A program made the translations under genes and the position numbers. Under the pieces are notes generated by a model. It was not told where the DNA came from and ran no database searches. It worked only from the letters and a program-made list of their open reading frames with translations. Positions 46,961-63,203 of a stretch of DNA of 64,000 bases are shown here, in pieces. The DNA is taken from the IMG/VR virus record IMGVR_UViG_3300042453_005404, positions 62,001 through 126,000 of that record; one strand, written 5' to 3'. Numbering within the stretch: position 1 is the stretch's first letter; each line of letters begins with the position of its first letter.

Positions 46961-47011
46961 ACCCTTGAAATCATAGAGAAAAAACGTTAACAAAAAAAGG
47001 TAAAAAATACC

Positions 47012-48117: not shown

Positions 48118-48449
48118 TGGTTGATGAAATGAACAATCTGCAACTTGGCAAAATGTATTTGGTTAAAGAGCTTTTCTGGCTTCTTTATCCAACGAAAGGT
48201 CTGGCAGGAGGGGCTGCGGACGGCTTCGGGGGGCATGGTTGGCGGTTGAAGAAGCTGACGACTGCTTATGAAACTGCAAAATGGGAGAGCGAAAGTTTCA
48301 ACTGCAATGTTGATGTTGTTGAAGAAAACACTTGCTTTGTTTTGCTTGAAGTAGACAACGGTTATTTCAAACTTCTTAACTCAAACGGTAACATTGGTTG
48401 GACTTGGGGTAGGGATTTCTTCGAGCATTTCGAACTTGTCAAGGAATAA
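48114..48449 (+). CDS. Hypervariable SH3-like protein, subfamily A copy 1
   Basis: LGKMYLVKE.FW.LYPTK-[variable]-CNV.VVEENTC.VLLE...GNIGW...FELVKE. Confidence 0.85.
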   Translation: MMVDEMNNLQLGKMYLVKELFWLLYPTKGLAGGAADGFGGHGWRLKKLTTAYETAKWESESFNCNVDVVEENTCFVLLEVDNGYFKLLNSNGNIGWTWGRDFFEHFELVKE

Positions 48450-48452
48450 GCA

Positions 48453-48767
48453 ATGAACAATCTGCAACTTGGTAAGATGTATTTGGTTAAAGAGTTTTTC
48501 TGGTTTCTTTTTCCAACAAAAGAACTAGCGGAGCGCCAGTGCAGGTGGTCGAGGGCGGGGGCCTCGACATCGGGGGCGACGGGGGTGGCAAAAGTGTTAA
48601 GCCAAAATTTTAAATGCAACATTTTTGTTGTTGAACCAAAGACTTGCTTTGTTTTGCTTGAAGTAGATGATGATTATTACAAGCTTCTTGACTCAAATGG
48701 TAACATTGGTTGGATTTTTAGTTGGGATTTCTCTGGTTGTTTCGAACTTGTAAAGGATTTATGTTGA
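48453..48767 (+). CDS. Hypervariable SH3-like protein A2
   Basis: Same framework; G-rich insert 48528-48587. Confidence 0.85.
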   Translation: MNNLQLGKMYLVKEFFWFLFPTKELAERQCRWSRAGASTSGATGVAKVLSQNFKCNIFVVEPKTCFVLLEVDDDYYKLLDSNGNIGWIFSWDFSGCFELVKDLC

Positions 48768-48798
48768 GAATATTTTCAGAGTATGATATACTTTTGAT
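48764..48798 (+). promoter_or_regulatory. Leaderless sigma70-like promoter (duplicated at 49431)
   Basis: TTGAGA-17-TATACT-6-ATG(48799). Confidence 0.8.
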
Positions 48799-49116
48799 AT
48801 GCTACAAATCGGTAAGATGTATTTGGTTAAAGAGTATTTCTGGTTTCTTTTTCCAACAAAAGAACTGGCGGTGGGGGCGATCGATCGCTTCGAGGGGCGG
48901 GCGTCGCAGGGCTGGGCGGCGACGGGGGCGGTGGTGGCAAAAGTGTTAAGCGAACGTTATAAATGCAACATTTTTGTTGTTGAACCAAAGACTTGCGTTG
49001 TTTTGCTTGAAATGGATGAAACCGAACATTGCTATAAGCTTCTTGATTGTAATGGAAACATTGGTTGGACTCGTTGTTGGAGTTTCGCCTCCTATTTCGA
49101 GCTTGTAAAGGAATAA
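48799..49116 (+). CDS. Hypervariable SH3-like protein A3
   Basis: Same framework; insert 48865-48936 is 57/72 GC. Confidence 0.85.
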   Translation: MLQIGKMYLVKEYFWFLFPTKELAVGAIDRFEGRASQGWAATGAVVAKVLSERYKCNIFVVEPKTCVVLLEMDETEHCYKLLDCNGNIGWTRCWSFASYFELVKE

Positions 49117-49122
49117 GCAACA

Positions 49123-49434
49123 ATGCAACTTGGTAAGATGTATTTGGTTAAAGATTGGTTTTGGTTTCTTTATCCAACAAAAGAACTGGCAAGGACGCCT
49201 GCGGCGAAGGCGAGCAGGGCGATGCGGCCCACGAGGGCGAGGGCGGGGATGGATGCGAAATGGTTGAGCCAAGAATTTAAATGCAACGTTGGTGTTGTTG
49301 AACCAAACACTTGCGTTGTGTTGCTTGAAGTAGATAATGGTTATTTTAAGCTTCTTGATTCGAATGGTAACATTGGTTGGATTATTTGTTGGAATGTCTC
49401 CAAAAATTTCGAACTTGTAAGGGATTTATGTTGA
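49123..49434 (+). CDS. Hypervariable SH3-like protein A4
   Basis: Same framework; insert 49191-49258. Confidence 0.85.
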   Translation: MQLGKMYLVKDWFWFLYPTKELARTPAAKASRAMRPTRARAGMDAKWLSQEFKCNVGVVEPNTCVVLLEVDNGYFKLLDSNGNIGWIICWNVSKNFELVRDLC

Positions 49435-49465
49435 GAATATTTTCAGAGTATGATATACTTTTGAT
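49431..49465 (+). promoter_or_regulatory. Leaderless sigma70-like promoter
   Basis: TTGAGA-17-TATACT-6-ATG(49466). Confidence 0.8.
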
Positions 49466-49711
49466 ATGCTACAAATCGGTAAGATGTATAAAGTTCCGTG
49501 GTATGTTGAAGCTGACGAGTACATAGCTGGACGACTGATTGAGCGAATCAAACTAAAAGATGGCGATCTTGTTGTTGTTGTTAGCATGGAAGAATACCGT
49601 ATGGGCGGGGAGATTCGTTGGGACACAAAACTGCTGACAGGTGACGGAAGACTTGTATACGTTTCGATATCGCAACCGGGGTCTGCATACTGGAAAAAAG
49701 CACATGAATAG
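49466..49711 (+). CDS. Divergent SH3-like family member
   Basis: MLQIGKMY...LKDGDLVVVV...KLLTGDG. Confidence 0.7.
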   Translation: MLQIGKMYKVPWYVEADEYIAGRLIERIKLKDGDLVVVVSMEEYRMGGEIRWDTKLLTGDGRLVYVSISQPGSAYWKKAHE

Positions 49712-50003
49712 AAATCTTCAAATCGGAAAGCTGTATAAAACACCTTGGAAGACTTCTTCTTACGGAGCTTACATCAAGTTTGATGATCATGGCATGGTGC
49801 CTGACTACAACAGAAGCATCGACCTTCCAGATGGCGCATATGTTGTTTTGCTTGAAGTTAACGTGAATAAAGCTGAATATTTCTATAACAATAGAAAAGC
49901 CAACACATACGTTCTTAAGGTTCTAACAGAGGATGGTGCTGTTGCATATGTTACGTGCACAGAAGCTGGTTTGGATTACTGGAAAAAGGTTGTTCGTCCA
50001 TAA
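49704..50003 (+). CDS. Divergent SH3-like family member
   Basis: LQIGKLY...VVLLEV...KVLTEDG; start at MNRNLQ. Confidence 0.7.
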   Translation: MNRNLQIGKLYKTPWKTSSYGAYIKFDDHGMVPDYNRSIDLPDGAYVVLLEVNVNKAEYFYNNRKANTYVLKVLTEDGAVAYVTCTEAGLDYWKKVVRP

Positions 50004-50017
50004 AACTTAGTTAATCC

Positions 50018-50052
50018 TTTAGATATTCATATTCTTATGGTATTCTATATAT
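50018..50052 (+). promoter_or_regulatory. Leaderless sigma70-like promoter
   Basis: TTTAGA-17-TATTCT-6-ATG(50053). Confidence 0.8.
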
Positions 50053-50427
50053 ATGAAGCAGAAGAAGGCTGTTGTTCGTCGCAAAGGTTCGGTTTCCAGC
50101 AAAGTCAAACAACTGGATTGGATCATGCAGTTTATCATTCGCATGAATCCTTGTGCGATTTGTGGTGGTTCCTTGGCTGATGGGTACAATCCTCGTTATC
50201 CGGGTAAAAGCATCACGCTGCATCATTCCATCGGAAGCCGTGAAGTTGACGATTGGGAGAATCTGGAGTATGTAGCTGGTATGGTGCTGTGTCATTCTAC
50301 ATGCCACAAGAGCTATCATTTGAAGCGCAGACACATGGATGCGGGCAAGGATGTAAACGAGGGCGAGGTTGCGATCATGGAAAGCAATATTGCCAAGGTT
50401 GTGAAGAAGCAGAGGAAAGTAAAATGA
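50053..50427 (+). CDS. HNH endonuclease-like protein
   Basis: CAICG...TLHH...LCH..CH..YH. Confidence 0.7.
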   Translation: MKQKKAVVRRKGSVSSKVKQLDWIMQFIIRMNPCAICGGSLADGYNPRYPGKSITLHHSIGSREVDDWENLEYVAGMVLCHSTCHKSYHLKRRHMDAGKDVNEGEVAIMESNIAKVVKKQRKVK

Positions 50428-50642
50428 ATCACACGATTGGAAAAATGCATCAGTTTGTAGCCGTTCAACTACCGATTTATAATAGGATCGGAGACGTTCC
50501 GTTTGCTTACTTGGTACAGAATGAAGTTGTTGTTTTTCTTTCGAAAACAGATAAATACGTAAAGGTACTATTTGACGATGGCACCGTTGGAATAGTGCCT
50601 TATTTTCCAGAACGTGATCATTGGGTTGAATACACCGGTTAG
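50424..50642 (+). CDS. Divergent SH3-like family member
   Basis: TIGKMH...VVVFLS...VKVLFDDG.VG; start at MNHTIG. Confidence 0.65.
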   Translation: MNHTIGKMHQFVAVQLPIYNRIGDVPFAYLVQNEVVVFLSKTDKYVKVLFDDGTVGIVPYFPERDHWVEYTG

Positions 50643-50656
50643 GAGAACGTAAAACA

Positions 50657-50986
50657 ATGTCCGAATATATTGAATCCGAGACAAACTGTTGGAACAAATC
50701 ACCAATGAAACAAGGTAAACTGTATTACGGGCTTTGTGATCGAGAGGTGATCGAAGAAAAGCTTTTACCTCATTTTTTTGATGCTCATGAGATCAATGAT
50801 GTGATTGAGGTAGTAGACGCAGCATCACCGGTTGTATTCTTGGAAAAGACAATCACAAGGCGAGAGGATGGATACGGTGGTAGAGAAAGGTATCAAACCT
50901 TTATAAAGATTCTTACACCTGCTGGAAATATTGGTTGGGTTGTTTGGTTTGAAGGCGATTGGAAGGAAGTAAAATCATGTCAATAA
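50657..50986 (+). CDS. Divergent SH3-like family member
   Basis: QGKLYY...VVFLEK...KILTPAGNIGWV. Confidence 0.7.
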   Translation: MSEYIESETNCWNKSPMKQGKLYYGLCDREVIEEKLLPHFFDAHEINDVIEVVDAASPVVFLEKTITRREDGYGGRERYQTFIKILTPAGNIGWVVWFEGDWKEVKSCQ

Positions 50987-51321
50987 CATTCTACGATCAG
51001 AACAATCCAGCAAAGTACAACGATGATGGAGATCAAATCGGTGGTGGTATCGAAGTAAACTTCGCAAACGGCAACGCATACACTGTGCTTTCTCTCATGG
51101 GTTTGTGCGGCAAAGATAATCCCGATCTTTGTGGAGAAATGAACGGTCACGACTTTCGTAAATGCGCATATCGTGCGTTAGCAACGTTGGATATGATAAA
51201 TGATGAAAGTCGATTTAACGTTGATCCCATCGATGTAGCACAACATTGGGGATACGCAAAAGAACGAATCAAACGGCTTTTAACGGTTTTTGCCGACGCT
51301 GAAACTGTTTGTTGGGGGTAA
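50977..51321 (+). CDS. Hypothetical protein
   Basis: EVNFANGNA..VL..MGL pattern; coupled start. Confidence 0.6.
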   Translation: MSITFYDQNNPAKYNDDGDQIGGGIEVNFANGNAYTVLSLMGLCGKDNPDLCGEMNGHDFRKCAYRALATLDMINDESRFNVDPIDVAQHWGYAKERIKRLLTVFADAETVCWG

Positions 51322-51323
51322 AG

Positions 51324-51486
51324 GTGGCATACTTTACCATAGGTAAACTGTATCAAAACGTTACAAAAAACGAAGCTTCTTGCTGATGATGGCACAGTTT
51401 ATCAGGCAGCGATTTTGAAAAACACACGTTACATACAAATCTGGTTTAAACCCGTTTCGTCATTTTCGGACATAGTTAAGTTATGA
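51324..51486 (+). pseudogene. Possible deleted/frameshifted SH3-like family remnant
   Basis: Frame 1 TIGKLYQ joins, after an A6 run (51365-70), frame 2 KLLADDGTVY; middle of the domain absent. Confidence 0.4.
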
Positions 51487-51828
51487 ATGATAAAAATATT
51501 GACAGGTGCCGAGCTAGTTCCCGGCAAAATGTATACTATTTGGGGGCGTTTGAATCGTGATACGTGGCCCGCATATCATCAACGACCAACTCTTCAATCA
51601 CCATCAACTGTTGCAACTGTTGCTCCATTGTTTCCATTGGAGCCATTTGTGTTTTTAGAACGCACGCCAAGTGAGTTTAGATGGAATGAAACCGATCCAA
51701 TGTATGACTACAAAATATTGACTTGTGACGGCGTTGTGGGCTGGCTATGCTTTCATGACGATGATTTGTCTGCTTTGGGTATTGGTTTTCGTGAATATGA
51801 TCCAAAAGACTTTGAAGTAAACCTTTAA
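51487..51828 (+). CDS. Divergent SH3-like family member
   Basis: LVPGKMY...FVFLE...KILTCDGVVGWL. Confidence 0.7.
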   Translation: MIKILTGAELVPGKMYTIWGRLNRDTWPAYHQRPTLQSPSTVATVAPLFPLEPFVFLERTPSEFRWNETDPMYDYKILTCDGVVGWLCFHDDDLSALGIGFREYDPKDFEVNL

Positions 51829-51868
51829 ATCGTAGCAACAACTTGATATACTAAAACTAGTTAAACCT

Positions 51869-51979
51869 ATGAGCATTCAAAGCATAATTTCTGCCACAGT
51901 GTTTGCAAGTGTTTTCTTTTTGTGGATATTCACTTGTCCAATGATAACACACAAAAAGTGTTGCTGTTGTAAAAACTAA
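51869..51979 (+). CDS. Small membrane peptide with Cys-rich tail (36 aa)
   Basis: Hydrophobic helix then KKCCCCKN; promoter TTTAAA(51824)-17-TATACT upstream. Confidence 0.4.
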   Translation: MSIQSIISATVFASVFFLWIFTCPMITHKKCCCCKN

Positions 51980-51995
51980 CAAAAGGAAGCAAATC

Positions 51996-52193
51996 GTGCG
52001 TAACTATGAAAAACAAAAAGATCTTGTTAATGCCAATCTTGTTGAAGGTGAGTTGATCAACTACAAAAACAAAGTTTGCAGAGTTTCTATATCCCGTGGT
52101 GGCCCTTTAGACAAACCAAAAGTAAGTGTTGTTTTAACTCCTATGCCTCAAATCACAATCACAGAAGACACAGAAATCATTGTTTCTACATAA
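51996..52193 (+). CDS. Hypothetical protein
   Basis: AAGGA RBS, GTG start. Confidence 0.5.
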   Translation: MRNYEKQKDLVNANLVEGELINYKNKVCRVSISRGGPLDKPKVSVVLTPMPQITITEDTEIIVST

Positions 52194-52328
52194 ACGTTTA
52201 TGACTTTCCGCCATGAGCTTTATGTTGTTTTTTGGATTGTTGTTGTTTTGTACGCATATGCGTTAGGTTTCGCACTCGCAAAATGCTAATATGCCTTGAT
52301 TACAAGCACAAACAAAAAATAAAATACC

Positions 52329-52363
52329 TTTAGATGTTCATGAACATATGATATTCTATATGC
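52329..52363 (+). promoter_or_regulatory. Leaderless sigma70-like promoter
   Basis: TTTAGA-17-TATTCT-6-ATG(52364). Confidence 0.8.
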
Positions 52364-53503
52364 ATGATGAACGTTCACCCGGCTCTTCGTTTCTCGTTTG
52401 ACCATCTTCGCACGGCTCTTATGACCCGTGTGGATTCTGGTGCAATCAACATCACTCGCAAGGGTTCTCTGGCCCTTTTCAACTATTCCAAGGATTGTCA
52501 GTTTGAGCATCTTTGGGATGATTATACCATCATGGCCCGTGGTCTTATTCTCGACATGGAGAATGAGTCTATTGTGGCTCTTCCTTTTCCCAAGTTCTTC
52601 AATGCGTCGGAGAAGGAGGGTGCTAGTGTTGTCAAGTTTGATGCTCCCTTTGATGCGTATACCAAGATGGACGGATCGCTGGGTATCGTGTATTTCCACA
52701 ATGGTTCATGGCACGTTGCAACCCGTGGTTCGTTTACGTCCGAACAGTCTGTGTGGGCAGAGAAGTGGCTGCACGATAACCTCAAGCCTTATCACCAGCT
52801 TGATCAGAATGTGACATATCTTTGTGAGATTATCTATGACAGCAACCGTATTGTTATCAACTACCCTTTTGAGGGTTTGGTGATGCTTGGTGCTTATAAC
52901 CGTGTTACCGGCATTGAGCTTGACTATGATCGTGATTTGCGTCCGTTGTGTGAGCGTATCGGTATGATGCTTGCAGAGCGTCACCAGTTCACTTCATTTG
53001 TTGCTGCACAGGAGTTTGTCAAGACTCTTCCCGGCAACGAGGAAGGTTTCGTTATTCGTTTTCGGGATTCTGGCGAGCGTGTAAAGCTCAAGGGTTCTGA
53101 ATATTGCTCTTTGCACAAGATGATTAGCAACATTACTCCTTTGGCTATCTGGGAGCTTTTGTGTGCGGGTTACTCCATTGAAGATTACAAGAAGGCTTTG
53201 CCGGAAGAGTTTTGGGATGAGGTTGACGAGATTGTTGGTCATTTCCAGCGTCGTGCTGCTTGTGTTATGCTGGATGTTGTGAACCTTTATTCCGAGGTTT
53301 CTGATTTGTCTGACAAGGATCTTGGTTTGAAGCTGGCTGGCGAGTTCAAGCGTCGTGAGAATGCTTCGTTGCTGTTCCCTTATCGTAAGAAGGGAACGGC
53401 TTTGGTTCACGGTTTGGTGATGAAGTCTTTGCGGCCTACTGGAAACGTGATTGAGGGATATGTGCCGTCTGCCATGCTCCAGCGTTCTCAGTCGGAGGAA
53501 TGA
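52364..53503 (+). CDS. RNA ligase (T4 Rnl1-like)
   Basis: ARGLI...PFPKFFN, KMDGSLG, ATRGSF, EGFVI, VKLKG.EY. Confidence 0.9.
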   Translation: MMNVHPALRFSFDHLRTALMTRVDSGAINITRKGSLALFNYSKDCQFEHLWDDYTIMARGLILDMENESIVALPFPKFFNASEKEGASVVKFDAPFDAYTKMDGSLGIVYFHNGSWHVATRGSFTSEQSVWAEKWLHDNLKPYHQLDQNVTYLCEIIYDSNRIVINYPFEGLVMLGAYNRVTGIELDYDRDLRPLCERIGMMLAERHQFTSFVAAQEFVKTLPGNEEGFVIRFRDSGERVKLKGSEYCSLHKMISNITPLAIWELLCAGYSIEDYKKALPEEFWDEVDEIVGHFQRRAACVMLDVVNLYSEVSDLSDKDLGLKLAGEFKRRENASLLFPYRKKGTALVHGLVMKSLRPTGNVIEGYVPSAMLQRSQSEE

Positions 53504-53505
53504 TC

Positions 53506-53811
53506 ATGCAACTCGGCAAGATGTATTTGGTTAAAGAGCTTTTCTGGTTTCTTTATCCAACAAAAGAACGGGCGGAGTATGGGCGTGCGAGGGCGGCGTC
53601 CGTTGCGGCGATGGCGTGGCGGTGGGCGGCGAATAATGCAAAAGTGTTAAGCGAACGTTATAAATGCAACGTTTTTGTTGTTGAAGAAAACACTTGCGTT
53701 GTTTTGCTTGAAGTAGATGATGATTATTACAAGTTTCTTGATTGTAATGGAAACATTGGTTGGATTATTTGTCGGGATTTCTCCAACTATTTCGAGATTG
53801 CAAAGGAATAA
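53506..53811 (+). CDS. Hypervariable SH3-like protein A5
   Basis: Same framework; insert 53569-53631. Confidence 0.85.
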   Translation: MQLGKMYLVKELFWFLYPTKERAEYGRARAASVAAMAWRWAANNAKVLSERYKCNVFVVEENTCVVLLEVDDDYYKFLDCNGNIGWIICRDFSNYFEIAKE

Positions 53812-53817
53812 GCAACA

Positions 53818-54138
53818 ATGCAACTTGGTAAGATGTATTTGGTTAAAGAGCTTTTCTGGCTTCTCTTTCCAACAAAAGAAGTAGCGTGCGACCTTATGGC
53901 GATAGGCTGGGACAGCCCACTGGAGGCAACAGTGGAGAAGGGGCAGGCTTATCAAGAAGCAGACTATATAAGTGAACATATGTGTTGCGACGTTGCTGTG
54001 GTGGAAGAAAATACTTGTTTTGTGTTGCTTGAGCAAGATGAAAAGCTTTTCAAACTTCTTGATTGCAACGGTAACATTGGTTGGATATGGTGTAGGTGTT
54101 TGTCTTTTTCCAAGTATTTCGAACTTGTAAAGGAATAA
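53818..54138 (+). CDS. Hypervariable SH3-like protein A6
   Basis: Same framework; insert less GC-rich. Confidence 0.85.
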   Translation: MQLGKMYLVKELFWLLFPTKEVACDLMAIGWDSPLEATVEKGQAYQEADYISEHMCCDVAVVEENTCFVLLEQDEKLFKLLDCNGNIGWIWCRCLSFSKYFELVKE

Positions 54139-54144
54139 GCAACA

Positions 54145-54447
54145 ATGCAACTTGGTAAGATGTATTTGGTTAAAGAGTATTATTGGTTTATGTTTCCAAC
54201 AAAAGAACTAGCGGAGGCCATCGCCGCTGGACGGCGGGCGCTGGCCGCACTCGATGCGGGCGCTGCGGGACGGAGGGTGGCGAGCGAAGATTATAACTGC
54301 AACAACGTTTCTTTTGTTGAAGAAAACACTTACGTTGTTTTGCTTGAACAAGACAATGATTATATCAAAATTCTTGACTCAAATGGAAACATTGGTTGGA
54401 TTGTTTGTTGGGATTTTTCCGACTTTTTCGAACTTGTAAAGGAATAA
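54145..54447 (+). CDS. Hypervariable SH3-like protein A7
   Basis: Same framework; insert from 54211. Confidence 0.85.
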   Translation: MQLGKMYLVKEYYWFMFPTKELAEAIAAGRRALAALDAGAAGRRVASEDYNCNNVSFVEENTYVVLLEQDNDYIKILDSNGNIGWIVCWDFSDFFELVKE

Positions 54448-54453
54448 GCAACA

Positions 54454-54750
54454 ATGCAACTTGGTAAGATGTATCGTTTTACAGAAAGAGCAAAACGAGC
54501 TTGCATAAGGTATGCAATCAAAAACCGTTGGCCTCTCACGTTCTCTTCCGAGGTTAGTCTCGCAAAAGGTCGAGTGCGGGCGCAATATCCATTGGATTCA
54601 TGCATTGTTGTGTTAGAGTCTCACGAAACAACAACTTCTGGAAAGCTTTTGTCTGGTAAAACATCACGCAGACTTAAGGTTTTACTTCCTGATGGTAAGA
54701 TTGGTACGATGTATGTGGATACAACAGAATGGGAACAGGTAACTGAATGA
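54454..54750 (+). CDS. Divergent SH3-like family member sharing only MQLGKMY with the array
   Basis: Identical upstream junction, then divergent; KVLLPDGKIG. Confidence 0.7.
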   Translation: MQLGKMYRFTERAKRACIRYAIKNRWPLTFSSEVSLAKGRVRAQYPLDSCIVVLESHETTTSGKLLSGKTSRRLKVLLPDGKIGTMYVDTTEWEQVTE

Positions 54751-54814
54751 TTATGGTACTTTGCTTTGCTGCTAGCCTTTGTTTGGCGATTTGCTCACGA
54801 AAGCAAATCGTTCG

Positions 54815-54994
54815 ATGAAAACCATTAAACTACCAGAAACCATTGAACGTTCAACAGTGCTACTTGTTTTTGGCTTAATCGTGTTTTCTGGCATGATCGG
54901 TTTTGCTTTTGGTGCTGATGCCGGTTATGCCAAAGGATTCCAAGATGGTTCACAAAGCCGCACTGTTTCTCCCATACCTCTTCAAATGCCCTAA
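54815..54994 (+). CDS. Small membrane protein
   Basis: TM helix followed by GY.KG..DG. Confidence 0.5.
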   Translation: MKTIKLPETIERSTVLLVFGLIVFSGMIGFAFGADAGYAKGFQDGSQSRTVSPIPLQMP

Positions 54995-55026
54995 AATCCA
55001 GCGGTTTAAGAAAAAGCAATAATACG

Positions 55027-55061
55027 TTTAGATATTCGTGAACGTATGCTATTCTAAAAGC
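55027..55061 (+). promoter_or_regulatory. Leaderless sigma70-like promoter
   Basis: TTTAGA-17-TATTCT-6-ATG(55062). Confidence 0.8.
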
Positions 55062-55256
55062 ATGAAGAACAACACGGTTTCTGCTCGTCGTCTCGCTCGT
55101 TCGATGGAGTCTAGCGTCAAGCTTATCGCTCGCAAGTTTGCACGCTTGAACGAAGCACAGCGTCTTCGTGCAATGCAGATTATTGCGAACATGGATGATC
55201 TTAGGTCGTTTGAGTCCATCGTTCGTAACTCGTTTGTGTGCAACACGGAGCTCTGA
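55062..55256 (+). CDS. Hypothetical protein
   Basis: Start defined by promoter geometry (MKNNTV). Confidence 0.6.
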   Translation: MKNNTVSARRLARSMESSVKLIARKFARLNEAQRLRAMQIIANMDDLRSFESIVRNSFVCNTEL

Positions 55257-55259
55257 AAC

Positions 55260-55466
55260 ATGGGATACGTAAAAGACATGGTGCTTCACAAGCAAGAAGA
55301 GCTTGCTGGTGAGATTCACGAAGATGCTTTTCTCGCTTATCTGGAAGAGATGGAGCAGATTCAAAACAATCACATTCTGGCAGATCATGTGATTCTTAGC
55401 AATGGCAAGCGTTGCTATATTCAAGCGAACTGTTATCCTGCTGACGGTGTGTGTGAGTGCAAGTAA
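55260..55466 (+). CDS. Hypothetical protein
   Basis: MGYVKDM.. N-terminus; TAATG-coupled to A8. Confidence 0.6.
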   Translation: MGYVKDMVLHKQEELAGEIHEDAFLAYLEEMEQIQNNHILADHVILSNGKRCYIQANCYPADGVCECK

Positions 55467-55741
55467 TGCAACTCGGTAAGATGCATTTGGTTAAAGAGTG
55501 GTTTTGGTTTCTTTATCCAACAAAAGAAAAGACGTGGCGCTCGGGGCCAGCGGCGAGGGCGGATAATGCAAAATTGTTAAGCGAACATGTCCAATGCAAC
55601 GTTTTTGTTGTTGAACCAAACACTTGTGTTGTTTTGCTTGAAGTAGATAATGGTTATTTTAAGCTTCTTGATTCAAACGGAAACATTGGTTGGATTCGTT
55701 GTTGGAGTTTCGCCTCCTATTTCGAGCTTGTAAAGGAATAA
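55466..55741 (+). CDS. Hypervariable SH3-like protein A8
   Basis: Same framework; shortest insert 55529-55561. Confidence 0.85.
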   Translation: MQLGKMHLVKEWFWFLYPTKEKTWRSGPAARADNAKLLSEHVQCNVFVVEPNTCVVLLEVDNGYFKLLDSNGNIGWIRCWSFASYFELVKE

Positions 55742-55747
55742 GCAACA

Positions 55748-56047
55748 ATGCAACTTGGTAAGATGTATTTGGTTAAAGATTGGTTTTGGTTTCTTTATCC
55801 AACAAAAGAACTGGCGATGCGTGGGCGGAGCTCGGGGGAGGGGGCGATGACGCTGGCGAACGGGCGGCTGGGCGCAGAATGGTTGAGCCAAGAATTTAAA
55901 TGCAACGTTGGTGTTGTTGAACCAAACACTTGCTTTGTCTTGCTTGAAGTAGATGAAGTATATTTCAAGGTTCTTGATTGTAATGGAAACATTGGTTGGA
56001 CTTATTGCTTTGATTTCTCTGGTTATTTCGAACTTGTAAAGGAATAA
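55748..56047 (+). CDS. Hypervariable SH3-like protein A9
   Basis: Flanks identical to A4; insert 55816-55877. Confidence 0.85.
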   Translation: MQLGKMYLVKDWFWFLYPTKELAMRGRSSGEGAMTLANGRLGAEWLSQEFKCNVGVVEPNTCFVLLEVDEVYFKVLDCNGNIGWTYCFDFSGYFELVKE

Positions 56048-56051
56048 AGCA

Positions 56052-56351
56052 ATGAACGATCTTCAACTCGGTAAGATGTATTTGGTTAAAGAGTGGTTTT
56101 GGTTTCTTTATCCAACAAAAGAACTGGCGGCGGGGTTCTCGTCGCCGTCGAGGGCGGAGTGGTGGTGTAATGCAAAAGTGTTAAGCGAACGTTATAAATG
56201 CAACGTTTTTGTTGTTGAACCAAACACTTGCGTTGTTTTGCTTGAAGTAGATAATGGTTATTTTAAGCTTCTTGATTCAAACGGTAACATTGGTTGGATA
56301 TGGTGTAGGTGTTTGGCTTTTTCCAAGCATTTCGAACTTGTCAAGGAATAA
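56052..56351 (+). CDS. Hypervariable SH3-like protein A10
   Basis: Insert 56124-56165, 13/14 codons NNG. Confidence 0.85.
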   Translation: MNDLQLGKMYLVKEWFWFLYPTKELAAGFSSPSRAEWWCNAKVLSERYKCNVFVVEPNTCVVLLEVDNGYFKLLDSNGNIGWIWCRCLAFSKHFELVKE

Positions 56352-56355
56352 AGCA

Positions 56356-56688
56356 ATGCAACTTGGTAAGATGTATTTGGTTAAAGAGTATTGTTGGTTT
56401 CTTTATCCAACAAAAGAACTGGCCTCGACGACGGGGCCACGGTGGTCGAGCGTGAGGCGGTGGCCCTCCGACGAGGAGCGCACGGTGGCTTATCGAGATG
56501 CAAAATGGTTGAGCCAAGCATTTAAATGCAACGTTGGTGTTGTTGAACCAAAAACTAGTTTTGTCTTGCTTGAACAAGACAAGGATCATTTCAAGGTTCT
56601 TGATTCAAACGGAAACATTGGTTGGATTCGTAGCGATGATTTTTCGAAAAATTTCAAGGTTTTGAATGAAAAGAAGAATAACCTTTAG
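56356..56688 (+). CDS. Hypervariable SH3-like protein A11
   Basis: Start at MQLGKMY (56356); insert from 56419. Confidence 0.85.
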   Translation: MQLGKMYLVKEYCWFLYPTKELASTTGPRWSSVRRWPSDEERTVAYRDAKWLSQAFKCNVGVVEPKTSFVLLEQDKDHFKVLDSNGNIGWIRSDDFSKNFKVLNEKKNNL

Positions 56689-56718
56689 ATATGTCAAATA
56701 TTTTGGTATTATAGAAGT
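56684..56718 (+). promoter_or_regulatory. Leaderless sigma70-like promoter
   Basis: TTTAGA-17-TATTAT-6-ATG(56719). Confidence 0.8.
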
Positions 56719-57477
56719 ATGAAGCGAACGATTGTAATCGGTGATGTACATGGTTGCCTTGCAGAGCTCAAGGAGCTTGTTGACGAGGTTGGATATGTTC
56801 GTGGTGAGGATCGATTGATTCTTGCTGGTGATCTTGTGGATCGTGGTGTAGATTCTGCTGGAGTTGTTCGTTATGCAATGAAGATTGGTGCCGAGGCTGT
56901 TTGCGGCAATCATGACAACAAGCTTTTGCGTCGTTCCAAGCACCTTGCACGGCAGCGTAGCAATCCCGCATACGTCAACCCGATGAAGCCTTGCGAAGAC
57001 CAAGAAAACACTCTTGCGAGTCTTGGTGATGCAGAGTTGGCGTGGCTTGGATCTTTGCCTTATCATATCAAGCTTGACGAGTTTAACGCTGTTGTGGCTC
57101 ATGCTGGCATTGTTCCCGGTGTTCCTCTTGTTCGTCAACGTGATGAAGCGTTTATGATGGTTCGTTACGTTGATAAGGATAACGGCAAGATGAAGCATAT
57201 GGTTATGCCGGGATATCTTCGTCCAGAAAACAGTGATTACTGGGCAGATAAGTTTGACAGCAGCTTTGATGTTATCTTTGGCCACAACGTTGTTGGATTG
57301 AAGGATATCAAGGTTTGGGAAAACACTAACGGTGGTCGTTGCTTTGGTATCGATACTGGTTGTGTGTTTGGAGGACGCTTGAGCGCCCTTGTTATGCAAG
57401 CTCGCAGCAAGCCTTATGAGGTTATTCAAGTACAAGCACACAAGCAACACTGCGTTTCTGATCTATTTTCAGAGTGA
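56719..57477 (+). CDS. Metallophosphoesterase (ApaH/PrpA/Pnkp-phosphatase-like)
   Basis: GDVHG, GDLVDRG, GNHD, HAG, FGH, DTGC. Confidence 0.9.
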   Translation: MKRTIVIGDVHGCLAELKELVDEVGYVRGEDRLILAGDLVDRGVDSAGVVRYAMKIGAEAVCGNHDNKLLRRSKHLARQRSNPAYVNPMKPCEDQENTLASLGDAELAWLGSLPYHIKLDEFNAVVAHAGIVPGVPLVRQRDEAFMMVRYVDKDNGKMKHMVMPGYLRPENSDYWADKFDSSFDVIFGHNVVGLKDIKVWENTNGGRCFGIDTGCVFGGRLSALVMQARSKPYEVIQVQAHKQHCVSDLFSE

Positions 57478-57489
57478 AAAGAGCATAAT

Positions 57490-57883
57490 ATGGAAAACAA
57501 ACATAAGCACTTTACAGTATTCAACAATCGATGGTTTATGCTGTTTCGAGAGCAAGCAGGAGTGATTAGCGAAAGCCCTTGTTGGGTTTTGTTTTACGAC
57601 TGTTATTCGCATTACAACGAATCTTTGATCAAGCTTTTGATTGAAGCTGCAAGAGAATACAAAAGCGATAGACACCTAGCAATGTAAGTCAAAAATGAAC
57701 AACGACGAAAAGCAAAAACTTATCGACGATTTCGAAAAAGCTATTAGCGAGATTCGTGTGTTGCGTTACACTTCTCCAGATGAAGAGCTAAAAGGTCTTA
57801 GAGTTCATTTGTTTGAGAATGAATGGGATAGGTTGGAGCACACTATTAGAGAACTAAGAAAGAATGAAACCGAAGAAAGGTAA
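57490..57883 (+). CDS. Two small hypothetical proteins (57490-57687, 57695-57883)
   Basis: Consecutive co-directional ORFs. Confidence 0.5.
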
Positions 57884-58148
57884 GCTTTACACACTAGAGC
57901 TTAAATGGAACACAGATCCTGCGAATATCAGATCTGTTGCTGTATGGAATCGCAGACTTGATGTTGGTGACTTTATGGATAAATCATTAGTGATAGGCAG
58001 AATCGAATACAACAAAGATATGTTTATCTTTTTGGAAGATGGAACAAACGGATTTAGCCAAAAGAGTCCAAAGATTTTGACCAGCGATGGAGTTGTTGGG
58101 TATATTGTGCCAAACTATGATATCTGTTCGATGAAACGGGTTAAGTAG
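57864..58148 (+). CDS. Divergent SH3-like family member
   Basis: KKGKLYTL...FIFLEDG...KILTSDGVVGYI. Confidence 0.7.
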   Translation: MKPKKGKLYTLELKWNTDPANIRSVAVWNRRLDVGDFMDKSLVIGRIEYNKDMFIFLEDGTNGFSQKSPKILTSDGVVGYIVPNYDICSMKRVK

Positions 58149-58161
58149 AAAGAAGACGACT

Positions 58162-59364
58162 ATGAGCGAACGTTATCAGATTATAATCAAGGCTGGGGAG
58201 CATACTTTTCATTTCAAAACCAAGACAAGGGTTGGGGAGTTTTGGAACTTCTCAGAGGAGATGAAGGAGCATATTGATTGGGAGCAGATGGCTATTGGAT
58301 TGGACAAAAAGACCAAGGAAGTTTTGGACTCTGTGAGTTGTCCTAAGTGTAAGTCTAGCACACAGGAAACATTTATGGAGGGTCAGTATCTTGTTCCTTC
58401 TAGTGACAGGGATGCTATTATCAAGGCTTGCACTAAATGTCAGTGGTCTAGGTTGGAGCGACTATGAGTGATATAAAGTTTCCAGTTGTATCAAAAGAAA
58501 TTATTGACAAAGTTTTTACTTCTGATGATGGATGGACTACTGTATATGAGGGTCCAACCATCGTAAGCAGTGCAAGTATTATGCCACAGATTTATGTGCC
58601 GCTTCAAGTTTCTCATATATTCAAGAAGGAAGATAAAGAATGAAACGCTATTATGCCAAGGCTGACACATGGTTCAAGGAAGGAACGGAAGCGTTTAGAG
58701 AAGAAGAGATGTTTCCTTATGGTAGTTTGACTGATGGTGAAACTGGAGAGAAAACGGGCTCAGCGATTTATCGTGGGATTTACGTTATTGGATCTGGTGG
58801 CAGCTATCTTGATAAATCATACAAAGAAGGGGAAGAAGTTGAGATGCGAGAACATTGCTCGGACGATGAGTTTCTTGTGGTAGAGGAATAGGTTATGGGA
58901 ATAAATGGGGATACCAAGGATATTGGTTGGATTCAATGTAGCCAATGTGGGTGGGGTTGTGAAGTACATCGTTCAGAAGTTGAGATTGGGGATTATGTAG
59001 ATCGGCAATCATGTCCTGATTGTGGTCTTGGGCCATGTGAGATTGATTGGGATTATCCAGATGGTAAGGGTTGGGTAGCAGAAAAAGTTTGACTTATTGA
59101 TAATGGTATGATAGTTTAAACCTATCGAAAGCAAAGGAAAATATGAAAGCAACGTTTAAGTCATTTGTCGAAGGCGAGAAGCGATTCATTGTAGTAGGTG
59201 AGCCTCATGTATATCAGAATGGATTCCTTGTCACTTGTATTGATACAAGCACTGGAGAAACCGAAAGCAAAACTATCGCAAGCTCTGAGAGACTTGATCT
59301 ATGTGAGTTCGAACTAAAATGCCTTGGTAAAGTTGTTTGGGAAAAGAAGCTTATCCCAGTATGA
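58162..59364 (+). CDS. Run of five small hypothetical proteins (58162-58467 Zn-ribbon, 58464-58643, 58640-58891, 58895-59092 Zn-ribbon, 59143-59364)
   Basis: Coupled ORFs; CxxC pairs in two; 58464-58643 read manually. Confidence 0.55.
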
Positions 59365-59756
59365 CAGAGATAGAAGAAGAAAGAATGTGGCTCAAGTGTT
59401 TGGAGCTGGAACGAGAGAATAAACGTCTTCGTGAAATAATGAACATCGGATCGCTTTATACAGTGAAGAAGTATTTTTGGTTGCTTTTTCCAACAAAAGC
59501 CCTCACCGTGGGTGACGAACTGCACGCCGATGGCCACGGCCACGCCATCCCCTTCGCCGCCTTCGCCTCCATCGCCGCCGATTATTGGAGCAGACGATAC
59601 AACTGTGAAGTTACTTATTTTTGTCCTGATTCAATCGTTGTTTTCCTTGAAGAAGATGGAAATTACAAGAAAGTTCTGACTTCAGATGGAAAGATTGGTT
59701 GGATTTGGTTTGCTGAAGAATACTACAACGATTGCTTTGAGGAAGTAAATCCATGA
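59361..59756 (+). CDS. Hypervariable SH3-like protein, subfamily B copy 1 (with 26-aa N-terminal extension; core starts 59439)
   Basis: MNIGSLY.VKK.FW.LFPTK-[C-rich insert 59499-59579]-YWS...CEV.YF.PDS..VFLEEDG...KVLTSDGKIGW. Confidence 0.85.
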   Translation: MTEIEEERMWLKCLELERENKRLREIMNIGSLYTVKKYFWLLFPTKALTVGDELHADGHGHAIPFAAFASIAADYWSRRYNCEVTYFCPDSIVVFLEEDGNYKKVLTSDGKIGWIWFAEEYYNDCFEEVNP

Positions 59757-60052
59757 ACATTGGAAGCCTTTATAGGGTTAAGAAGTTTTATTGGTTGCTT
59801 TTTCCAACAAAAGAAATCGCCGCTGTAGCAGAACACCCCGCCTCCTCCCCCAGCGCCGCCGCCCTCGCCGCCGCCAGCGCCTATTGGAGCGGCCAGCTGA
59901 ACTGTGAAGTAACTTGTTTTTCTCCTGATTCCATTATTGTATTTCTTGAAGAAGATGGGAAATACAAGAAGGTTCTGACTTCTGAAGGAAGAATCGGATG
60001 GACTTGGTTTATTGAATCATATAACGAATGCTTTGAGGAAGTAAATCCATGA
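59753..60052 (+). CDS. Hypervariable SH3-like protein B2
   Basis: 16 consecutive NNC codons at 59834-59881. Confidence 0.85.
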   Translation: MNIGSLYRVKKFYWLLFPTKEIAAVAEHPASSPSAAALAAASAYWSGQLNCEVTCFSPDSIIVFLEEDGKYKKVLTSEGRIGWTWFIESYNECFEEVNP

Positions 60053-60363
60053 ACATTGGATCGCTTTATACAGTGAAGAAGTATTTTTGGTTTCTTTTTT
60101 CAACAAAAGCCGTCGCCGCCGCCGCATCCGACCCACCGTCCACCGCCGCATCCGACGCACCGTCCGCCGCCGCCGCCGGAGAAGCCGCTGCTTATTTGAG
60201 CAGACGATACGACTGTGAAGTTACTTATTTTTCTCCTGATTCCATCGTTGTTTTCCTTGAAAATGATGGAAAACTCAAGAAAGTATTGACTTCTGATGGA
60301 AAGATTGGTTGGACTTGGTTTAGTGAAACCTATAACGAATGCTTTGAGGAAGTAAATCCATGA
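60049..60363 (+). CDS. Hypervariable SH3-like protein B3
   Basis: C-rich insert with an internal 24-nt duplication. Confidence 0.85.
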   Translation: MNIGSLYTVKKYFWFLFSTKAVAAAASDPPSTAASDAPSAAAAGEAAAYLSRRYDCEVTYFSPDSIVVFLENDGKLKKVLTSDGKIGWTWFSETYNECFEEVNP

Positions 60364-60665
60364 ACATTGGATCGCTTTATACAGTGAAGAAGTGGTCTTG
60401 GTCACTTTTTCCAACAAAGGAAACTGCCGCCGCCGCCGCCGCAAGCAGCCCCGCCGCCGCAGGAGCCGCTCCCGACGCCGCTCCCGCCGCTGATTATTGG
60501 AGCAAACAGTTAAACTGCAATGTAACCTACTTTTCTCCTGATTCCTATATTGTCTTCTTGGAAGAAGATACGAAGTTCAAGAAAGTTCTTACTTCTACTG
60601 GAAAGCTTGGTTGGGTTTGGTTTGATGAAAGTTATAATCATTGTTTTGAGGAAGTATCGTCGTGA
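60360..60665 (+). CDS. Hypervariable SH3-like protein B4
   Basis: (GCC)5 run and GCCGCTCCC duplication in the insert. Confidence 0.85.
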   Translation: MNIGSLYTVKKWSWSLFPTKETAAAAAASSPAAAGAAPDAAPAADYWSKQLNCNVTYFSPDSYIVFLEEDTKFKKVLTSTGKLGWVWFDESYNHCFEEVSS

Positions 60666-60925: not shown

Positions 60926-60929
60926 TATC

Positions 60930-60964
60930 TTGATATTCAGATTAACGTTTGCTATACTGTATTC
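60930..60964 (+). promoter_or_regulatory. Leaderless sigma70-like promoter
   Basis: TTGATA-17-TATACT-6-ATG(60965). Confidence 0.8.
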
Positions 60965-63199: not shown

Positions 63200-63203
63200 T
63201 CCC

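What the first reader, a model, noticed from the sequence alone, without database searches (positions are those of the whole stretch)
48528..60491. Variable loops carry a codon-phase signature: NNG in subfamily A, NNC in subfamily B
Seen: third positions are G in 16/20 (A2), 19/24 (A3), 17/21 (A5), 17/21 (A9) and 13/14 (A10) loop codons. They are C in 22/27 (B1), and B2 has 16 consecutive NNC codons (59834-59881). Positions 1-2 vary freely around a GCG (A) or GCC (B) consensus. Conserved third positions with variable first and second positions is the opposite of ordinary purifying selection. (GCG)n and (GCC)n are the same CGG/CCG trinucleotide repeat on opposite strands. Inference: the loops derive from a CGG/CCG repeat seed or from templated or untemplated synthesis (RT-, TdT- or PrimPol-like) with strand-specific output, followed by mutagenesis. 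NNC recalls DGR AAC-to-NNC variation, but length variation and scarce retained adenines do not fit a classical DGR.
Basis: partly seen in the sequence, partly recalled or inferred. Interest (0 to 1): 0.9.

Follow-up and report, generated by a model that had tools for sequence, protein, structure and literature searches.

The report
Phage protein loops with fixed third-codon base
An uncultured freshwater giant phage carries over twenty copies of a small SH3-like protein whose one hypervariable, GC-rich loop is written almost entirely in NNG or NNC codons; the likeliest cause is alanine triplet repeats reshaped by selection and recombination, not a reverse transcriptase.

Summary
Fifteen tandem ~100-aa paralogs in the window each carry a 14-28 codon loop of 58-84% GC in a 39% GC genome. 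At four-fold codons the third base is G in 112/170 (subfamily A; framework 16/276) and C in 55/76 (subfamily B; framework 10/112). The pattern recurs in 99 distinct loops from 40 metagenomic loci. It is inherited by clade: NNG is one derived clade nested among NNC lineages.

It is not amino-acid composition, because other Ala/Pro/Ser-rich tracts of the same genome end in A/T. It is not host-like codon usage (GGG, AGG, CTC, CCC dominate).

No reverse transcriptase, template copy, PolX or PrimPol was found in the ~119 kb seen. Variable lengths, frequent indels and mosaic loops also argue against a DGR.

Between close strains, loop third positions change at the framework's synonymous rate. Positions 1-2 change 3-4 times faster (pN/pS 1.8 against 0.4). 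Crossovers and short conversion patches lie inside loops.

Best reading: loops seeded by Ala-coding CGG·CCG repeats (GCC or GCG), then diversified by selection, in-frame slippage and paralog recombination. Active maintenance of the phase is not excluded.

The parts
48117..48449 (+). Paralog A1; loop 48201-48278 (26 codons, G3 12)
   Evidence: Profile hit E 5e-43; loop counts; identical loop in strain L006
48453..48767 (+). Paralog A2; loop 48525-48590 (22 codons, G3 16)
48799..49116 (+). Paralog A3; loop 48865-48939 (25 codons, G3 19)
   Evidence: counterpart in L007 has a different loop and a 90-94% identical framework
49123..49434 (+). Paralog A4; loop 49186-49257 (24 codons, G3 19)
   Evidence: loop differs by one position-1 change from L006, L007 and L012
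53500..53811 (+). Paralog A5; loop 53569-53640 (24 codons, G3 17); patchwork of two neighbouring paralog loops
53818..54138 (+). Paralog A6; loop 53881-53961 (27 codons, G3 11; weakest signature, GC 58%)
54145..54447 (+). Paralog A7; loop 54208-54273 (22 codons, G3 9, C3 6); alleles differ by a compensated +1/-1 frameshift
55457..55741 (+). Paralog A8; loop 55529-55570 (14 codons, G3 9)
   Evidence: the L006 allele has a 6-nt tandem duplication
55748..56047 (+). Paralog A9; loop 55811-55876 (22 codons, G3 17)
56052..56351 (+). Paralog A10; loop 56124-56174 (17 codons, G3 13); used as search query and for the structure model
56356..56688 (+). Paralog A11; loop 56419-56502 (28 codons, G3 16, C3 6)
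   Evidence: shares a 29-nt loop segment with another paralog, L006:9391
59439..59756 (+). Paralog B1; loop 59502-59579 (26 codons, C3 21)
59753..60052 (+). Paralog B2; loop 59816-59881 (22 codons, C3 18; 16 consecutive NNC codons at 59834-59881)
60049..60363 (+). Paralog B3; loop 60112-60189 (26 codons, C3 17; internal 24-nt tandem duplication)
60360..60665 (+). Paralog B4; loop 60423-60491 (23 codons, C3 16; begins with five GCC codons)

Best explanation
The loops are hypervariable surface inserts in an expanded family of ~100-aa SH3-like proteins. The family belongs to an uncultured, recombination-proficient freshwater jumbo phage of 260 kb. The insert lies between the N-terminal beta-hairpin and a conserved helix.

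How the codon-phase signature arises (inferred):
- The inserts began as Ala-coding triplet repeats of the CGG·CCG type, and are probably still fed by them. The repeat was (GCC)n in the older lineages and (GCG)n in one derived clade.
- They then diversified by three processes, all of which alter or reshuffle positions 1-2 while simply copying position 3.
- The first process is selection for amino-acid change.
- The second is in-frame slippage and microhomology indels.
- The third is unequal crossing-over and short-patch gene conversion between tandem paralogs of the same clade.
- Third positions drift only at the ordinary synonymous rate, so they still show the seed's G or C.

Shown here: the signature, its inheritance by clade, the position-specific rates, the indels, and the in-loop crossovers and conversion patches.

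Inferred: the repeat seed, selection as the cause of the fast change at positions 1-2, and a binding function for the loop.
For: 1. Specificity. At four-fold codons G is 112/170 in A loops against 16/276 in the framework, and C is 55/76 in B loops against 10/112. Ala/Pro/Ser/Arg-rich tracts in other genes of the same genome end in A/T.

2. Ala ground state.
- GCG is 20% of NNG-class codons and GCC 26% of NNC-class codons. The next most frequent codons are one or two steps away at positions 1-2.
- Pure runs persist, for example GCC x5 in B4.
- GCC and GCG are the only Ala phases of one duplex repeat. The reverse-complemented NNC profile predicts the NNG profile: predicted G .52/C .54/G .76, observed G .49/C .38/G .75.

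3. Rates, from 28 independent pairs chosen by framework similarity.
- Loop position-3 rate 0.024 against framework 0.022 (p = 0.77).
- Loop positions 1-2 rates 0.039 and 0.046 against 0.014 and 0.012 (p = 2e-4 and 3e-7).
- Nei-Gojobori pN/pS is 1.79 in loops (pS 0.023) and 0.41 in frameworks (pS 0.030).

4. Neutral decay fits. Framework four-fold distances are 0.17 within the NNG clade and 0.38 among NNC members, with saturation at 0.60. These predict about 91% and 76% retention of a pure seed. Observed retention at four-fold codons is about 79% and 78%. The longest-branch members have lost the signature.

5. Indels between close alleles are mostly multiples of three (3, 6, 9, 18, 21, 27 nt). 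One-nucleotide and other non-triplet gaps (1, 2, 4, 5 nt) also occur. The one case examined at codon level is a compensating pair, and the non-triplet gaps in the other pairs may partly be alignment artefacts.

6. Recombination inside loops.
- L006:15005 is identical to L025:646 up to the middle of the loop and nearly identical (a few single-base differences) to L025:1256 from there on.
- A5 is a patchwork of two adjacent paralogs.
- NNC codons inside NNG loops are clustered: 31 adjacent pairs against 14.4 expected.
- In the six pairs whose loops differ most, which I tallied by hand, loop third positions also differ more than framework third positions (10/140 against 13/458, p = 0.04). This is as expected for imported patches.

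7. The phage encodes gp32, RecA, a PD-(D/E)XK nuclease, ligases and its own polymerases.

8. The class is inherited. The NNG clade has support 97/94 and is nested among NNC lineages.
Against: - Long-term divergence looks more skewed to positions 1-2 than the short-term pN/pS of 1.8. For example, L004:10004 needs about 57% change at positions 1-2 but 14% at position 3 from a GCC seed.
- Third-position purity of non-Ala codons does not fall with Ala content (rho 0.07 and 0.18, not significant). A simple clock-like decay would predict a fall.
- In NNG loops the commonest exception at synonymous sites is C, not the A expected from G-to-A decay in an AT-rich genome.
- Framework synonymous distances may be underestimated because of gene conversion. 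In that case the loops would be older than assumed and some force would be needed to keep G3/C3.
- pN/pS above 1 cannot by itself separate selection from a mechanism that spares position 3.
- No pure long repeat was caught in the act of expanding.
- 54% of the genome was not seen.
Confidence: 0.5

Rival explanations
1. The G3 or C3 periodicity is actively maintained by selection at the DNA level, as in the GC-rich, GC-skewed vls cassettes of Lyme Borrelia. A GC-rich tract in an AT-rich genome would be a preferred site for microhomology-mediated exchange. A fixed base at every third position would act as a register, so that exchanges between unrelated loops fall in frame. Amino-acid diversity then has to be written in positions 1-2.
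For: - Crossover and conversion junctions lie inside loops, although the frameworks offer longer identical stretches.
- Unrelated loops are more alike in register than out of register: 0.38 against 0.32 for NNG, 0.43 against 0.28 for NNC.
- The amino-acid repertoire is subordinated to the third base in both clades.
- Purity is independent of Ala content.
- Composition parallels vls: loops 72% GC against 39%, skew +0.37 or -0.31. vls has 49% against 28.6% and skew 0.52, which the authors interpret as selected for gene conversion (PMC11499132).
Against: - Loop third positions change at the framework synonymous rate, with no sign of extra constraint.
- G-runs are fewer than composition predicts: 107 against 141. 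There is no excess of folding, mean z about 0. The G4 or hairpin versions therefore fail.
- It needs second-order selection.
- The higher in-register similarity follows automatically from the periodicity, so it does not show that the register is used.
Confidence: 0.22
2. A phase-aware templated diversifier rewrites the loops. This would be a DGR-like retroelement with an (AAS)n-type template, or an unknown system, encoded in the unseen part of the genome. It would randomise positions 1-2 and copy position 3.
For: - The NNC repertoire is what AAC-to-NNC mutagenesis gives.
- Orthologous loops are bimodal: identical, or changed at many sites at once while the flanks stay identical. For example, L011:4205 and L010:5540 have 0 differences in 231 framework bases and 13 substitutions in the loop.
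- 54% of the genome is unseen.
Against: - No RT was found among the Pfam-scanned large ORFs or the pre-annotated genes of about 119 kb, which includes at least 10 kb around all three arrays.
- No orphan copy of the loop flanks was found.
- Loop lengths range from 13 to 43 codons, and indels are frequent.
- The ground state is GCC/GCG, not AAC. Positions 1 and 2 have different spectra.
- Third positions also differ in the most diverged pairs.
- Mosaics are explained by known donor paralogs.
- The loop lies near the N-terminus of an SH3-like fold, not in a C-terminal C-type-lectin or Ig variable region.
Confidence: 0.07
3. The loops are filled by untemplated, G- or C-biased synthesis at a break, as TdT-like N-region addition does. 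Selection on the protein afterwards imposes the reading frame, so that position 3 shows the raw bias.
For: - Variable length, high GC, strong strand skew and sharp conserved junctions resemble CDR3 N-regions.
- Position 3, the least constrained site, is the most biased.
Against: - No PolX, TdT or PrimPol domain was found among the ORFs scanned.
- Untemplated addition gives no 3-base period.
- It does not explain GCC/GCG runs, internal tandem duplications or the mosaics traced to neighbouring paralogs.
- The strand choice is inherited by clade.
Confidence: 0.04
4. The loops are captured fragments of genes from a high-GC host, so the GC3 bias is inherited.
For: Loops are 58-84% GC in a 39% GC genome. 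A few mixed loops (L003:10010, 10334, 10667) use a codon mix that resembles high-GC bacteria.
Against: - High-GC genes mix G and C at third positions. Here it is one or the other.
- The dominant codons (GGG, AGG, TGG, or CTC, CCC) are not preferred codons of high-GC bacteria (the codon preferences are my own knowledge).
- The family has no relative in 185,579 species genomes.
- A 26-nt piece of the A11 loop has no exact match there. This is a weak test.
Confidence: 0.02

Closest known systems
Codon-homogeneous amino-acid repeats (polyalanine tracts from GCN / CGG·CCG triplet repeats) evolving by slippage and unequal crossing-over
   Same: Ala codon as the ground state; one synonymous codon dominating; length changes in multiples of three; internal tandem duplications; unequal crossovers between copies.
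   Different: Here the tract is not a homopolymer. It is a highly diversified 13-43 codon insert in which only the third base still shows the repeat. The state (GCC or GCG type) is inherited by whole clades of a multigene family in an AT-rich phage.
Segmental gene-conversion systems, especially the Borrelia vls locus (PMC11499132)
   Same: Tandem array of paralogous units; variation concentrated in short regions; mosaic variants built from neighbours; much higher G+C and strong GC skew than the rest of an AT-rich genome.
   Different: - There is no single expression site with silent cassettes; every copy is a complete gene.
- Change was seen between strains, not shown within one infection.
- The skew has either sign.
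- G-runs are under-represented rather than clustered.
- The strict codon phase is not a described vls feature in the text I read.
Diversity-generating retroelements (AAC to NNC)
   Same: Library-like NNC codons in a ligand-binding-type loop; saltatory replacement of a short tract between identical flanks.
   Different: No RT or template was found. Lengths are variable and indels frequent. The ground state is GCC/GCG rather than AAC. An NNG variant exists. The fold and the position of the tract differ.
SH3 domains with a specificity-determining loop between the first strands
   Same: Small beta-barrel whose best structural matches are SH3 domains. The variable insert follows the first beta-hairpin.
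   Different: Matches are weak (Foldseek E 0.06, TM 0.41-0.47; Pfam SH3_3 E 0.04). The insert is long and partly helical. No ligand is known.

Membership tests
Diversity-generating retroelement | Reverse transcriptase gene in the element, usually near the variable region | tested here: not met
   About 50 large ORFs (roughly 150 aa and longer, selected from the ORF lists) were scanned against Pfam, and called genes in walked loci carried Pfam annotation. No RVT family appeared in about 119 kb of the 260 kb genome, including at least 10 kb each side of all three arrays. Small ORFs in the window, L002 and L003 were not scanned, and the rest of the genome was not seen.
Diversity-generating retroelement | Template repeat nearly identical to the variable region, with mismatches at template adenines | tested here: not met
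   nhmmer profiles of the loop flanks hit only the family genes, plus one chance-level hit at E 0.17. No A-rich copy exists in the 98 kb scanned.
Diversity-generating retroelement | Variable region of fixed length, changed by substitution only | tested here: not met
   Loops are 13-43 codons long. Indels of 1-27 nt occur between close alleles.
Triplet-repeat-derived (polyalanine) tract | One synonymous codon dominates, and runs of it occur | tested here: met
   GCG 119 against GCC 13, GCT 5 and fewer than 5 GCA in NNG loops; GCC 217 against GCT 29, GCA 23 and GCG 10 in NNC loops. Runs reach five GCC codons.
Triplet-repeat-derived (polyalanine) tract | Length polymorphism in whole codons between close alleles | tested here: met
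   Indels of 3, 6, 9, 18, 21 and 27 nt, with frameworks no more than 4% diverged in most of these pairs.
Triplet-repeat-derived (polyalanine) tract | Observed expansion of a pure repeat | tested here: inconclusive
   Only a one-codon difference within an Ala run was seen (L006:13398 against L010:5540). No long pure tract was caught expanding.
Cassette-type segmental gene conversion (vls, pilE/pilS type) | Mosaic variants assembled from paralogous donors | tested here: met
   The L006:15005 chimera; the A5 patchwork; shared loop segments between paralogs.
Cassette-type segmental gene conversion (vls, pilE/pilS type) | One expression site plus promoterless silent cassettes; unidirectional transfer during infection | tested here: not met
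   All copies are complete ORFs with start codons in tandem arrays. The timescale of transfer cannot be tested with assemblies.
Cassette-type segmental gene conversion (vls, pilE/pilS type) | G-run clustering (G4 potential) on the coding strand | tested here: not met
   107 G-runs of 3 or more, against 141 +/- 7 in mononucleotide shuffles.
SH3-like fold | Five-stranded small beta-barrel matching solved SH3 domains | tested here: inconclusive
   AlphaFold2 model with pLDDT 82.8 and pTM 0.74. The top 18 PDB matches are SH3 domains or SH3-containing kinases, and nearly all of the top 50 are. Probability is 0.93-0.99, but E is 0.06 or worse and TM 0.4-0.47. Pfam SH3_3 gives E 0.04, below its cut-off.

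The most novel reading that the evidence does not exclude
The third-position periodicity is not a fossil but a working part. One possibility is a frame-keeping register that lets a recombination-proficient phage shuffle unrelated loop segments between more than 20 paralogs without losing the reading frame. That would be a retroelement-free, recombination-based diversity generator. The other possibility is the footprint of an undiscovered phase-aware diversifier that writes NNG or NNC codons.
Probability: 0.25. Interest if true: 0.9.

Novelty: new variant of a known kind. Interest (0 to 1): 0.62.

Why it matters
This would be a natural protein family whose binding-type loop is written like a synthetic NNS-style library, yet without a diversity-generating retroelement.

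If the reading given here holds, it shows how a triplet repeat, diversifying selection and paralog recombination can together build a repertoire of small binders in a phage, comparable to antibody CDRs. It also supplies a simple sequence signature for finding such repertoires elsewhere: local GC3 with a single base, inherited by clade.

If the phase is actively maintained, it would be a new principle for keeping the frame during combinatorial recombination.

The family is unannotated and found only in metagenomes: 233 clusters at 50% identity, none in isolate phages or in 185,579 species genomes. It is abundant in freshwater jumbo phages, so its targets are also open; host defence or takeover factors are a guess.

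Tried and rejected
- Lax clustering of loops. GC-rich low-complexity loops aligned spuriously, so it was discarded in favour of stricter designs.
- Selecting pairs by loop similarity. This suggested unusually conserved third positions. It proved to be an ascertainment effect once single-copy genes showed that the strains differ by only 0-6% at third positions and pairs were chosen by framework instead.
- G-quadruplex idea. G-runs are under-represented.
- RNA or DNA hairpin idea. There is no excess folding energy over codon shuffles.
- GC-biased gene conversion. It would favour G and C alike, and it should also enrich framework four-fold sites, which are only 18% G+C.
- Translation and tRNA ideas. 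There are no tRNA genes in the window, and the NNG and NNC sets have opposite decoding properties.
- Rfam. No match in the window.
- Amino-acid composition as the cause. Refuted by other low-complexity tracts of the same genome.
- Host capture.
- Polarising third-position changes. Too few informative sites.
- Correlating Ala content with third-position purity. Inconclusive.
- Walking the contig downstream. It stalled because the only DNA returned came from another strain.
- Literature search for a described equivalent. It found none.

Full report
**What is there**

The window is part of a 260,466-bp viral contig, IMGVR_UViG_3300042453_005404. Window position 1 corresponds to contig position 62,001.

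The sequence is phage-like:
- a baseplate wedge protein, glycosyltransferases and large lectin-domain proteins in the first 45 kb;
- then DNA ligase, an amidoligase, an RNA ligase, a phosphatase and an exonuclease among many small ORFs.

GC content is about 39%. No isolate phage is close. Megablast finds nothing. The baseplate protein is at most 31.5% identical to Flavobacterium and Microcystis phage proteins.

Between 48,117 and 60,665 lie 15 tandem paralogs of about 100 aa on the + strand, A1-A11 and B1-B4. The same genome has at least seven more outside the window: four at L002:9101-10315 and three at L003:10010-10993.

**The observation**

Each paralog has a conserved N-terminal part ending in PTKE and a conserved C-terminal part starting about 8 codons before a Cys. 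Between them is a loop of 14-28 codons that cannot be aligned between paralogs.

Loop GC is 58-84%. Third-position counts:

| | Loop | Framework | Fisher p |
|---|---|---|---|
| A loops, third-position G | 63% | 19% | 1e-39 |
| B loops, third-position C | 74% | 14% | 6e-28 |
| A loops, G at four-fold codons | 112/170 | 16/276 | |
| B loops, C at four-fold codons | 55/76 | 10/112 | |

In long ORFs of the window, G and C are 11% and 13% at four-fold codons.

'Vary freely' is slightly overstated. The GCG or GCC consensus is kept at 49%/39% of positions 1 and 2 in A and 64%/67% in B.

**Generality**

- A search of 5.8 billion proteins found 96 relatives, all from metagenomes and all with different loops.
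- A profile search of 1.84 billion representatives found 233 clusters.
- There is none in isolate phages and none in 185,579 species genomes.
- DNA came from two closely related strains (L006, L007) and 32 metagenome contigs. It gave 112 distinct members and 99 distinct loops.
- Loop cores fall into an NNG class (G3 75%) and an NNC class (C3 76%).
- On a tree of the frameworks, the NNG class is essentially one clade (support 97/94). It is nested among NNC lineages that include other phage genera, with one reversal.
- The phase is therefore a heritable property of lineages, although the loop sequences themselves are not conserved.

**What it is not**

*Not amino-acid composition.* Ala/Pro/Ser/Arg-rich tracts in five other genes of the same genome have A/T-rich third positions. 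One PAS-rich tract, for example, has A 52, T 39, G 16, C 12.

*The nucleotide rule dictates the residues.* NNG loops are rich in W, M, R, E and K and poor in D, N, H, Y, F and I. NNC loops are the reverse.

*Not host-like codon usage.* GGG, AGG and TGG, or CTC and CCC, dominate, and only one of G or C is used. A 26-nt piece of one loop has no exact match in the genome collection; this is a weak test.

*Not a classical DGR.*
- No reverse transcriptase was found among the Pfam-scanned large ORFs or the pre-annotated genes of about 119 kb, including at least 10 kb on each side of all three arrays.
- No orphan copy of the loop flanks was found.
- Loop lengths are 13-43 codons.
- Indels are frequent.
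- The ground state is GCC/GCG, not AAC.

*Not PolX, TdT or PrimPol.* No such domain was seen in the same scans.

*Not G-quadruplexes or hairpins.* G-runs are fewer than composition predicts (107 against 141). Folding energy equals that of codon shuffles.

There are no tRNA genes and no Rfam matches in the window.

**How the loops change**

The two related strains differ from the window by 0-6% at third positions of single-copy genes. Orthologous loops are bimodal.

Some are identical or differ by one base: A1, A4, A10, A11 and B1.

Others differ heavily while their flanks are identical:
- A5 against L006:6706 has 64 identical bases upstream, then at least 14 substitutions and a 21-nt indel.
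- L011:4205 against L010:5540 has 0 differences in 231 framework bases and 13 substitutions plus indels in the loop.
- A7 alleles differ by a compensated +1/-1 frameshift.

Along 28 independent pairs chosen by framework similarity:

| Position | Loop rate | Framework rate | p |
|---|---|---|---|
| 1 | 0.039 | 0.014 | 2e-4 |
| 2 | 0.046 | 0.012 | 3e-7 |
| 3 | 0.024 | 0.022 | 0.77 |

Nei-Gojobori counts give pN/pS 1.79 in loops (pS 0.023) and 0.41 in frameworks (pS 0.030). There is thus no general hypermutation and no special protection of the third base. Amino-acid-changing positions simply move faster.

Indels between close alleles are mostly whole codons (3-27 nt), often between short direct repeats.

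**Recombination inside loops**

- L006:15005 is identical to L025:646 from the upstream spacer to the middle of the loop. It is nearly identical (a few single-base differences) to L025:1256 from there to the stop codon. This is an unequal crossover whose junction lies in the loop, although the frameworks offer longer identical stretches.
- A5 is a patchwork of 10-30-nt pieces of two adjacent paralogs seen in L016.
- Several loops share their first 27-33 nt and then diverge.
- NNC codons inside NNG loops are clustered in patches: 31 adjacent pairs against 14.4 expected.
- In the six pairs whose loops differ most, tallied by hand, loop third positions also differ more than framework third positions (10/140 against 13/458, p = 0.04). 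This is expected if patches are imported.
- The phage encodes gp32, a RecA homologue, a PD-(D/E)XK nuclease, ligases and its own polymerases. It therefore has the enzymes for frequent recombination; that recombination is in fact frequent is an inference.

**Explanation**

GCC and GCG are the two Ala-coding phases of one duplex repeat, CGG·CCG.
- They are the commonest codons of the two classes, at 26% and 20%.
- The next codons lie one or two steps away at positions 1-2.
- Pure runs persist.
- The reverse complement of the NNC profile, read in the Ala phase, predicts G .52/C .54/G .76. The NNG class shows G .49/C .38/G .75.

The conserved Ala that opens the loop is GCG in A and GCC in B. It is GCT in a basal member without the signature (L023:727).

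My reading is as follows. The inserts arose, perhaps repeatedly, by slippage of such Ala codons. They then diversified by selection on the protein, in-frame indels and exchange among paralogs of the same clade. All of these processes copy the third base.

A rough neutral-decay calculation supports this. Framework four-fold distances are 0.17 within the NNG clade and 0.38 among NNC members, with saturation at 0.60. These predict about 91% and 76% retention of a pure seed. Observed retention at four-fold codons is about 79% and 78%. Members on the longest branches have lost the signature.

**What remains unexplained**

- Long-term divergence is more skewed to positions 1-2 than a pN/pS of 1.8 suggests (for example L004:10004).
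- Third-position purity of non-Ala codons does not fall with Ala content.
- The commonest synonymous exception in NNG loops is C rather than A.
- Framework distances may be deflated by gene conversion.

An active force that keeps G3 or C3 is therefore not excluded. The most attractive version is a recombination register. Unrelated loops are 6-15 points more alike in register than out of register. This is automatic, however, and does not show that the register is used.

The Borrelia vls cassettes offer a precedent. They combine high G+C and GC skew in an AT-rich genome with segmental gene conversion, and the authors regard the composition as selected (PMC11499132). Unlike vls, there is here no silent-cassette architecture and no G-run clustering.

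**Protein**

An AlphaFold2 model of A10 has pLDDT 82.8 and pTM 0.74. It shows a small beta-barrel with the variable segment after the first hairpin, leading into a conserved helix. That segment has the lowest confidence.

The top 18 PDB matches are SH3 domains or SH3-containing kinases, and nearly all of the top 50 are, but the scores are weak. The viral library adds nothing named. PHROGs has no family for these proteins and Pfam only weak, sub-threshold hits.

A role as variable binders of host or competitor factors is a guess. It rests on the fold, the copy number and pN/pS above 1.

**Verdict**

The polymerase and mutagenesis ideas are not. The case is best filed as a new variant of known processes: triplet-repeat tracts, diversifying selection and paralog recombination. 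About one chance in four remains that the phase itself is functional or that it marks an unknown diversifier.

Noticed in passing
L002:9101-10315 and L003:10010-10993 (contig 49.5-50.8 kb and about 130.2-131.2 kb): Seven more members of the family lie in the same genome outside the window. Four are NNG-type and sit right after an MnmA-like tRNA 2-thiouridylase gene. Three have mixed G/C third positions, and one of these is the single NNC reversal inside the NNG clade.
   Followed up: partly
window 49466-49711, 49700-50003, 50400-50642, 50657-50986, 51487-51828, 54454-54750, 57864-58148, 60662-60925: Eight further small ORFs share the N-terminal GK(M/L)Y motif and the C-terminal LLxxxGxIG(W/Y) motif but lack the GC-rich insert. 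They look like distant, loop-less relatives of the same small barrel, interspersed with the arrays.
   Followed up: no
L002:1624-3444: The RecA homologue is 607 aa, with two RecA matches and a weak intein-splicing hit at residues 309-345. It probably contains an intein.
   Followed up: no
window 35560-36540: An ORF with NUMOD3 motifs and a TnsA-like endonuclease domain sits among the large tail-fibre-like genes. It is likely a homing endonuclease.
   Followed up: no
window 54208-54273 and alleles L013:163, L006:7048, L024:1010: The A7 loop alleles carry a 10-bp perfect inverted repeat (GGCCATCGCC / GGCGATGGCC) 11 nt apart. The alleles differ by a +1/-1 compensated frameshift plus three substitutions within 22 nt. 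This is the kind of cluster that template switching in a quasi-palindrome produces.
   Followed up: partly
NNG-class loops in all loci, e.g. window 54214-54225 and 56461-56469: NNC codons inside NNG loops come in patches: 31 adjacent pairs against 14.4 expected. The origin of the patches is not settled; it could be import from NNC loops, in-phase inversion or ancestral remnants.
   Followed up: partly
window 48827-49123 (-), 48946-49272 (-), 60100-60444 (-): Antisense ORFs of about 100 codons run across the loops. They encode Pro/Gly/Arg-rich strings and are most simply by-products of stop-free GC-rich sequence.
   Followed up: no
L023:727: One family member, basal to the NNG clade, has an AT-rich loop (GC 33%, T at 11 of 19 third positions) and a GCT codon at the conserved loop-opening Ala. 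It shows what the site looks like without the signature.
   Followed up: partly
window 13668-17123 and 33086-35512: Two very large proteins carry concanavalin-like (Laminin_G_3) domains. They are probably tail fibres or adhesins. Most neighbouring large ORFs have no Pfam match at all.
   Followed up: no
window 45567-64000 against L006 and L007: Strains that are 93-100% identical in single-copy genes differ in the number and order of array genes. The window's A2-A3 block, for example, is absent from L006, and extra paralogs are present in L006 and L007. Copy number therefore turns over quickly.
   Followed up: partly
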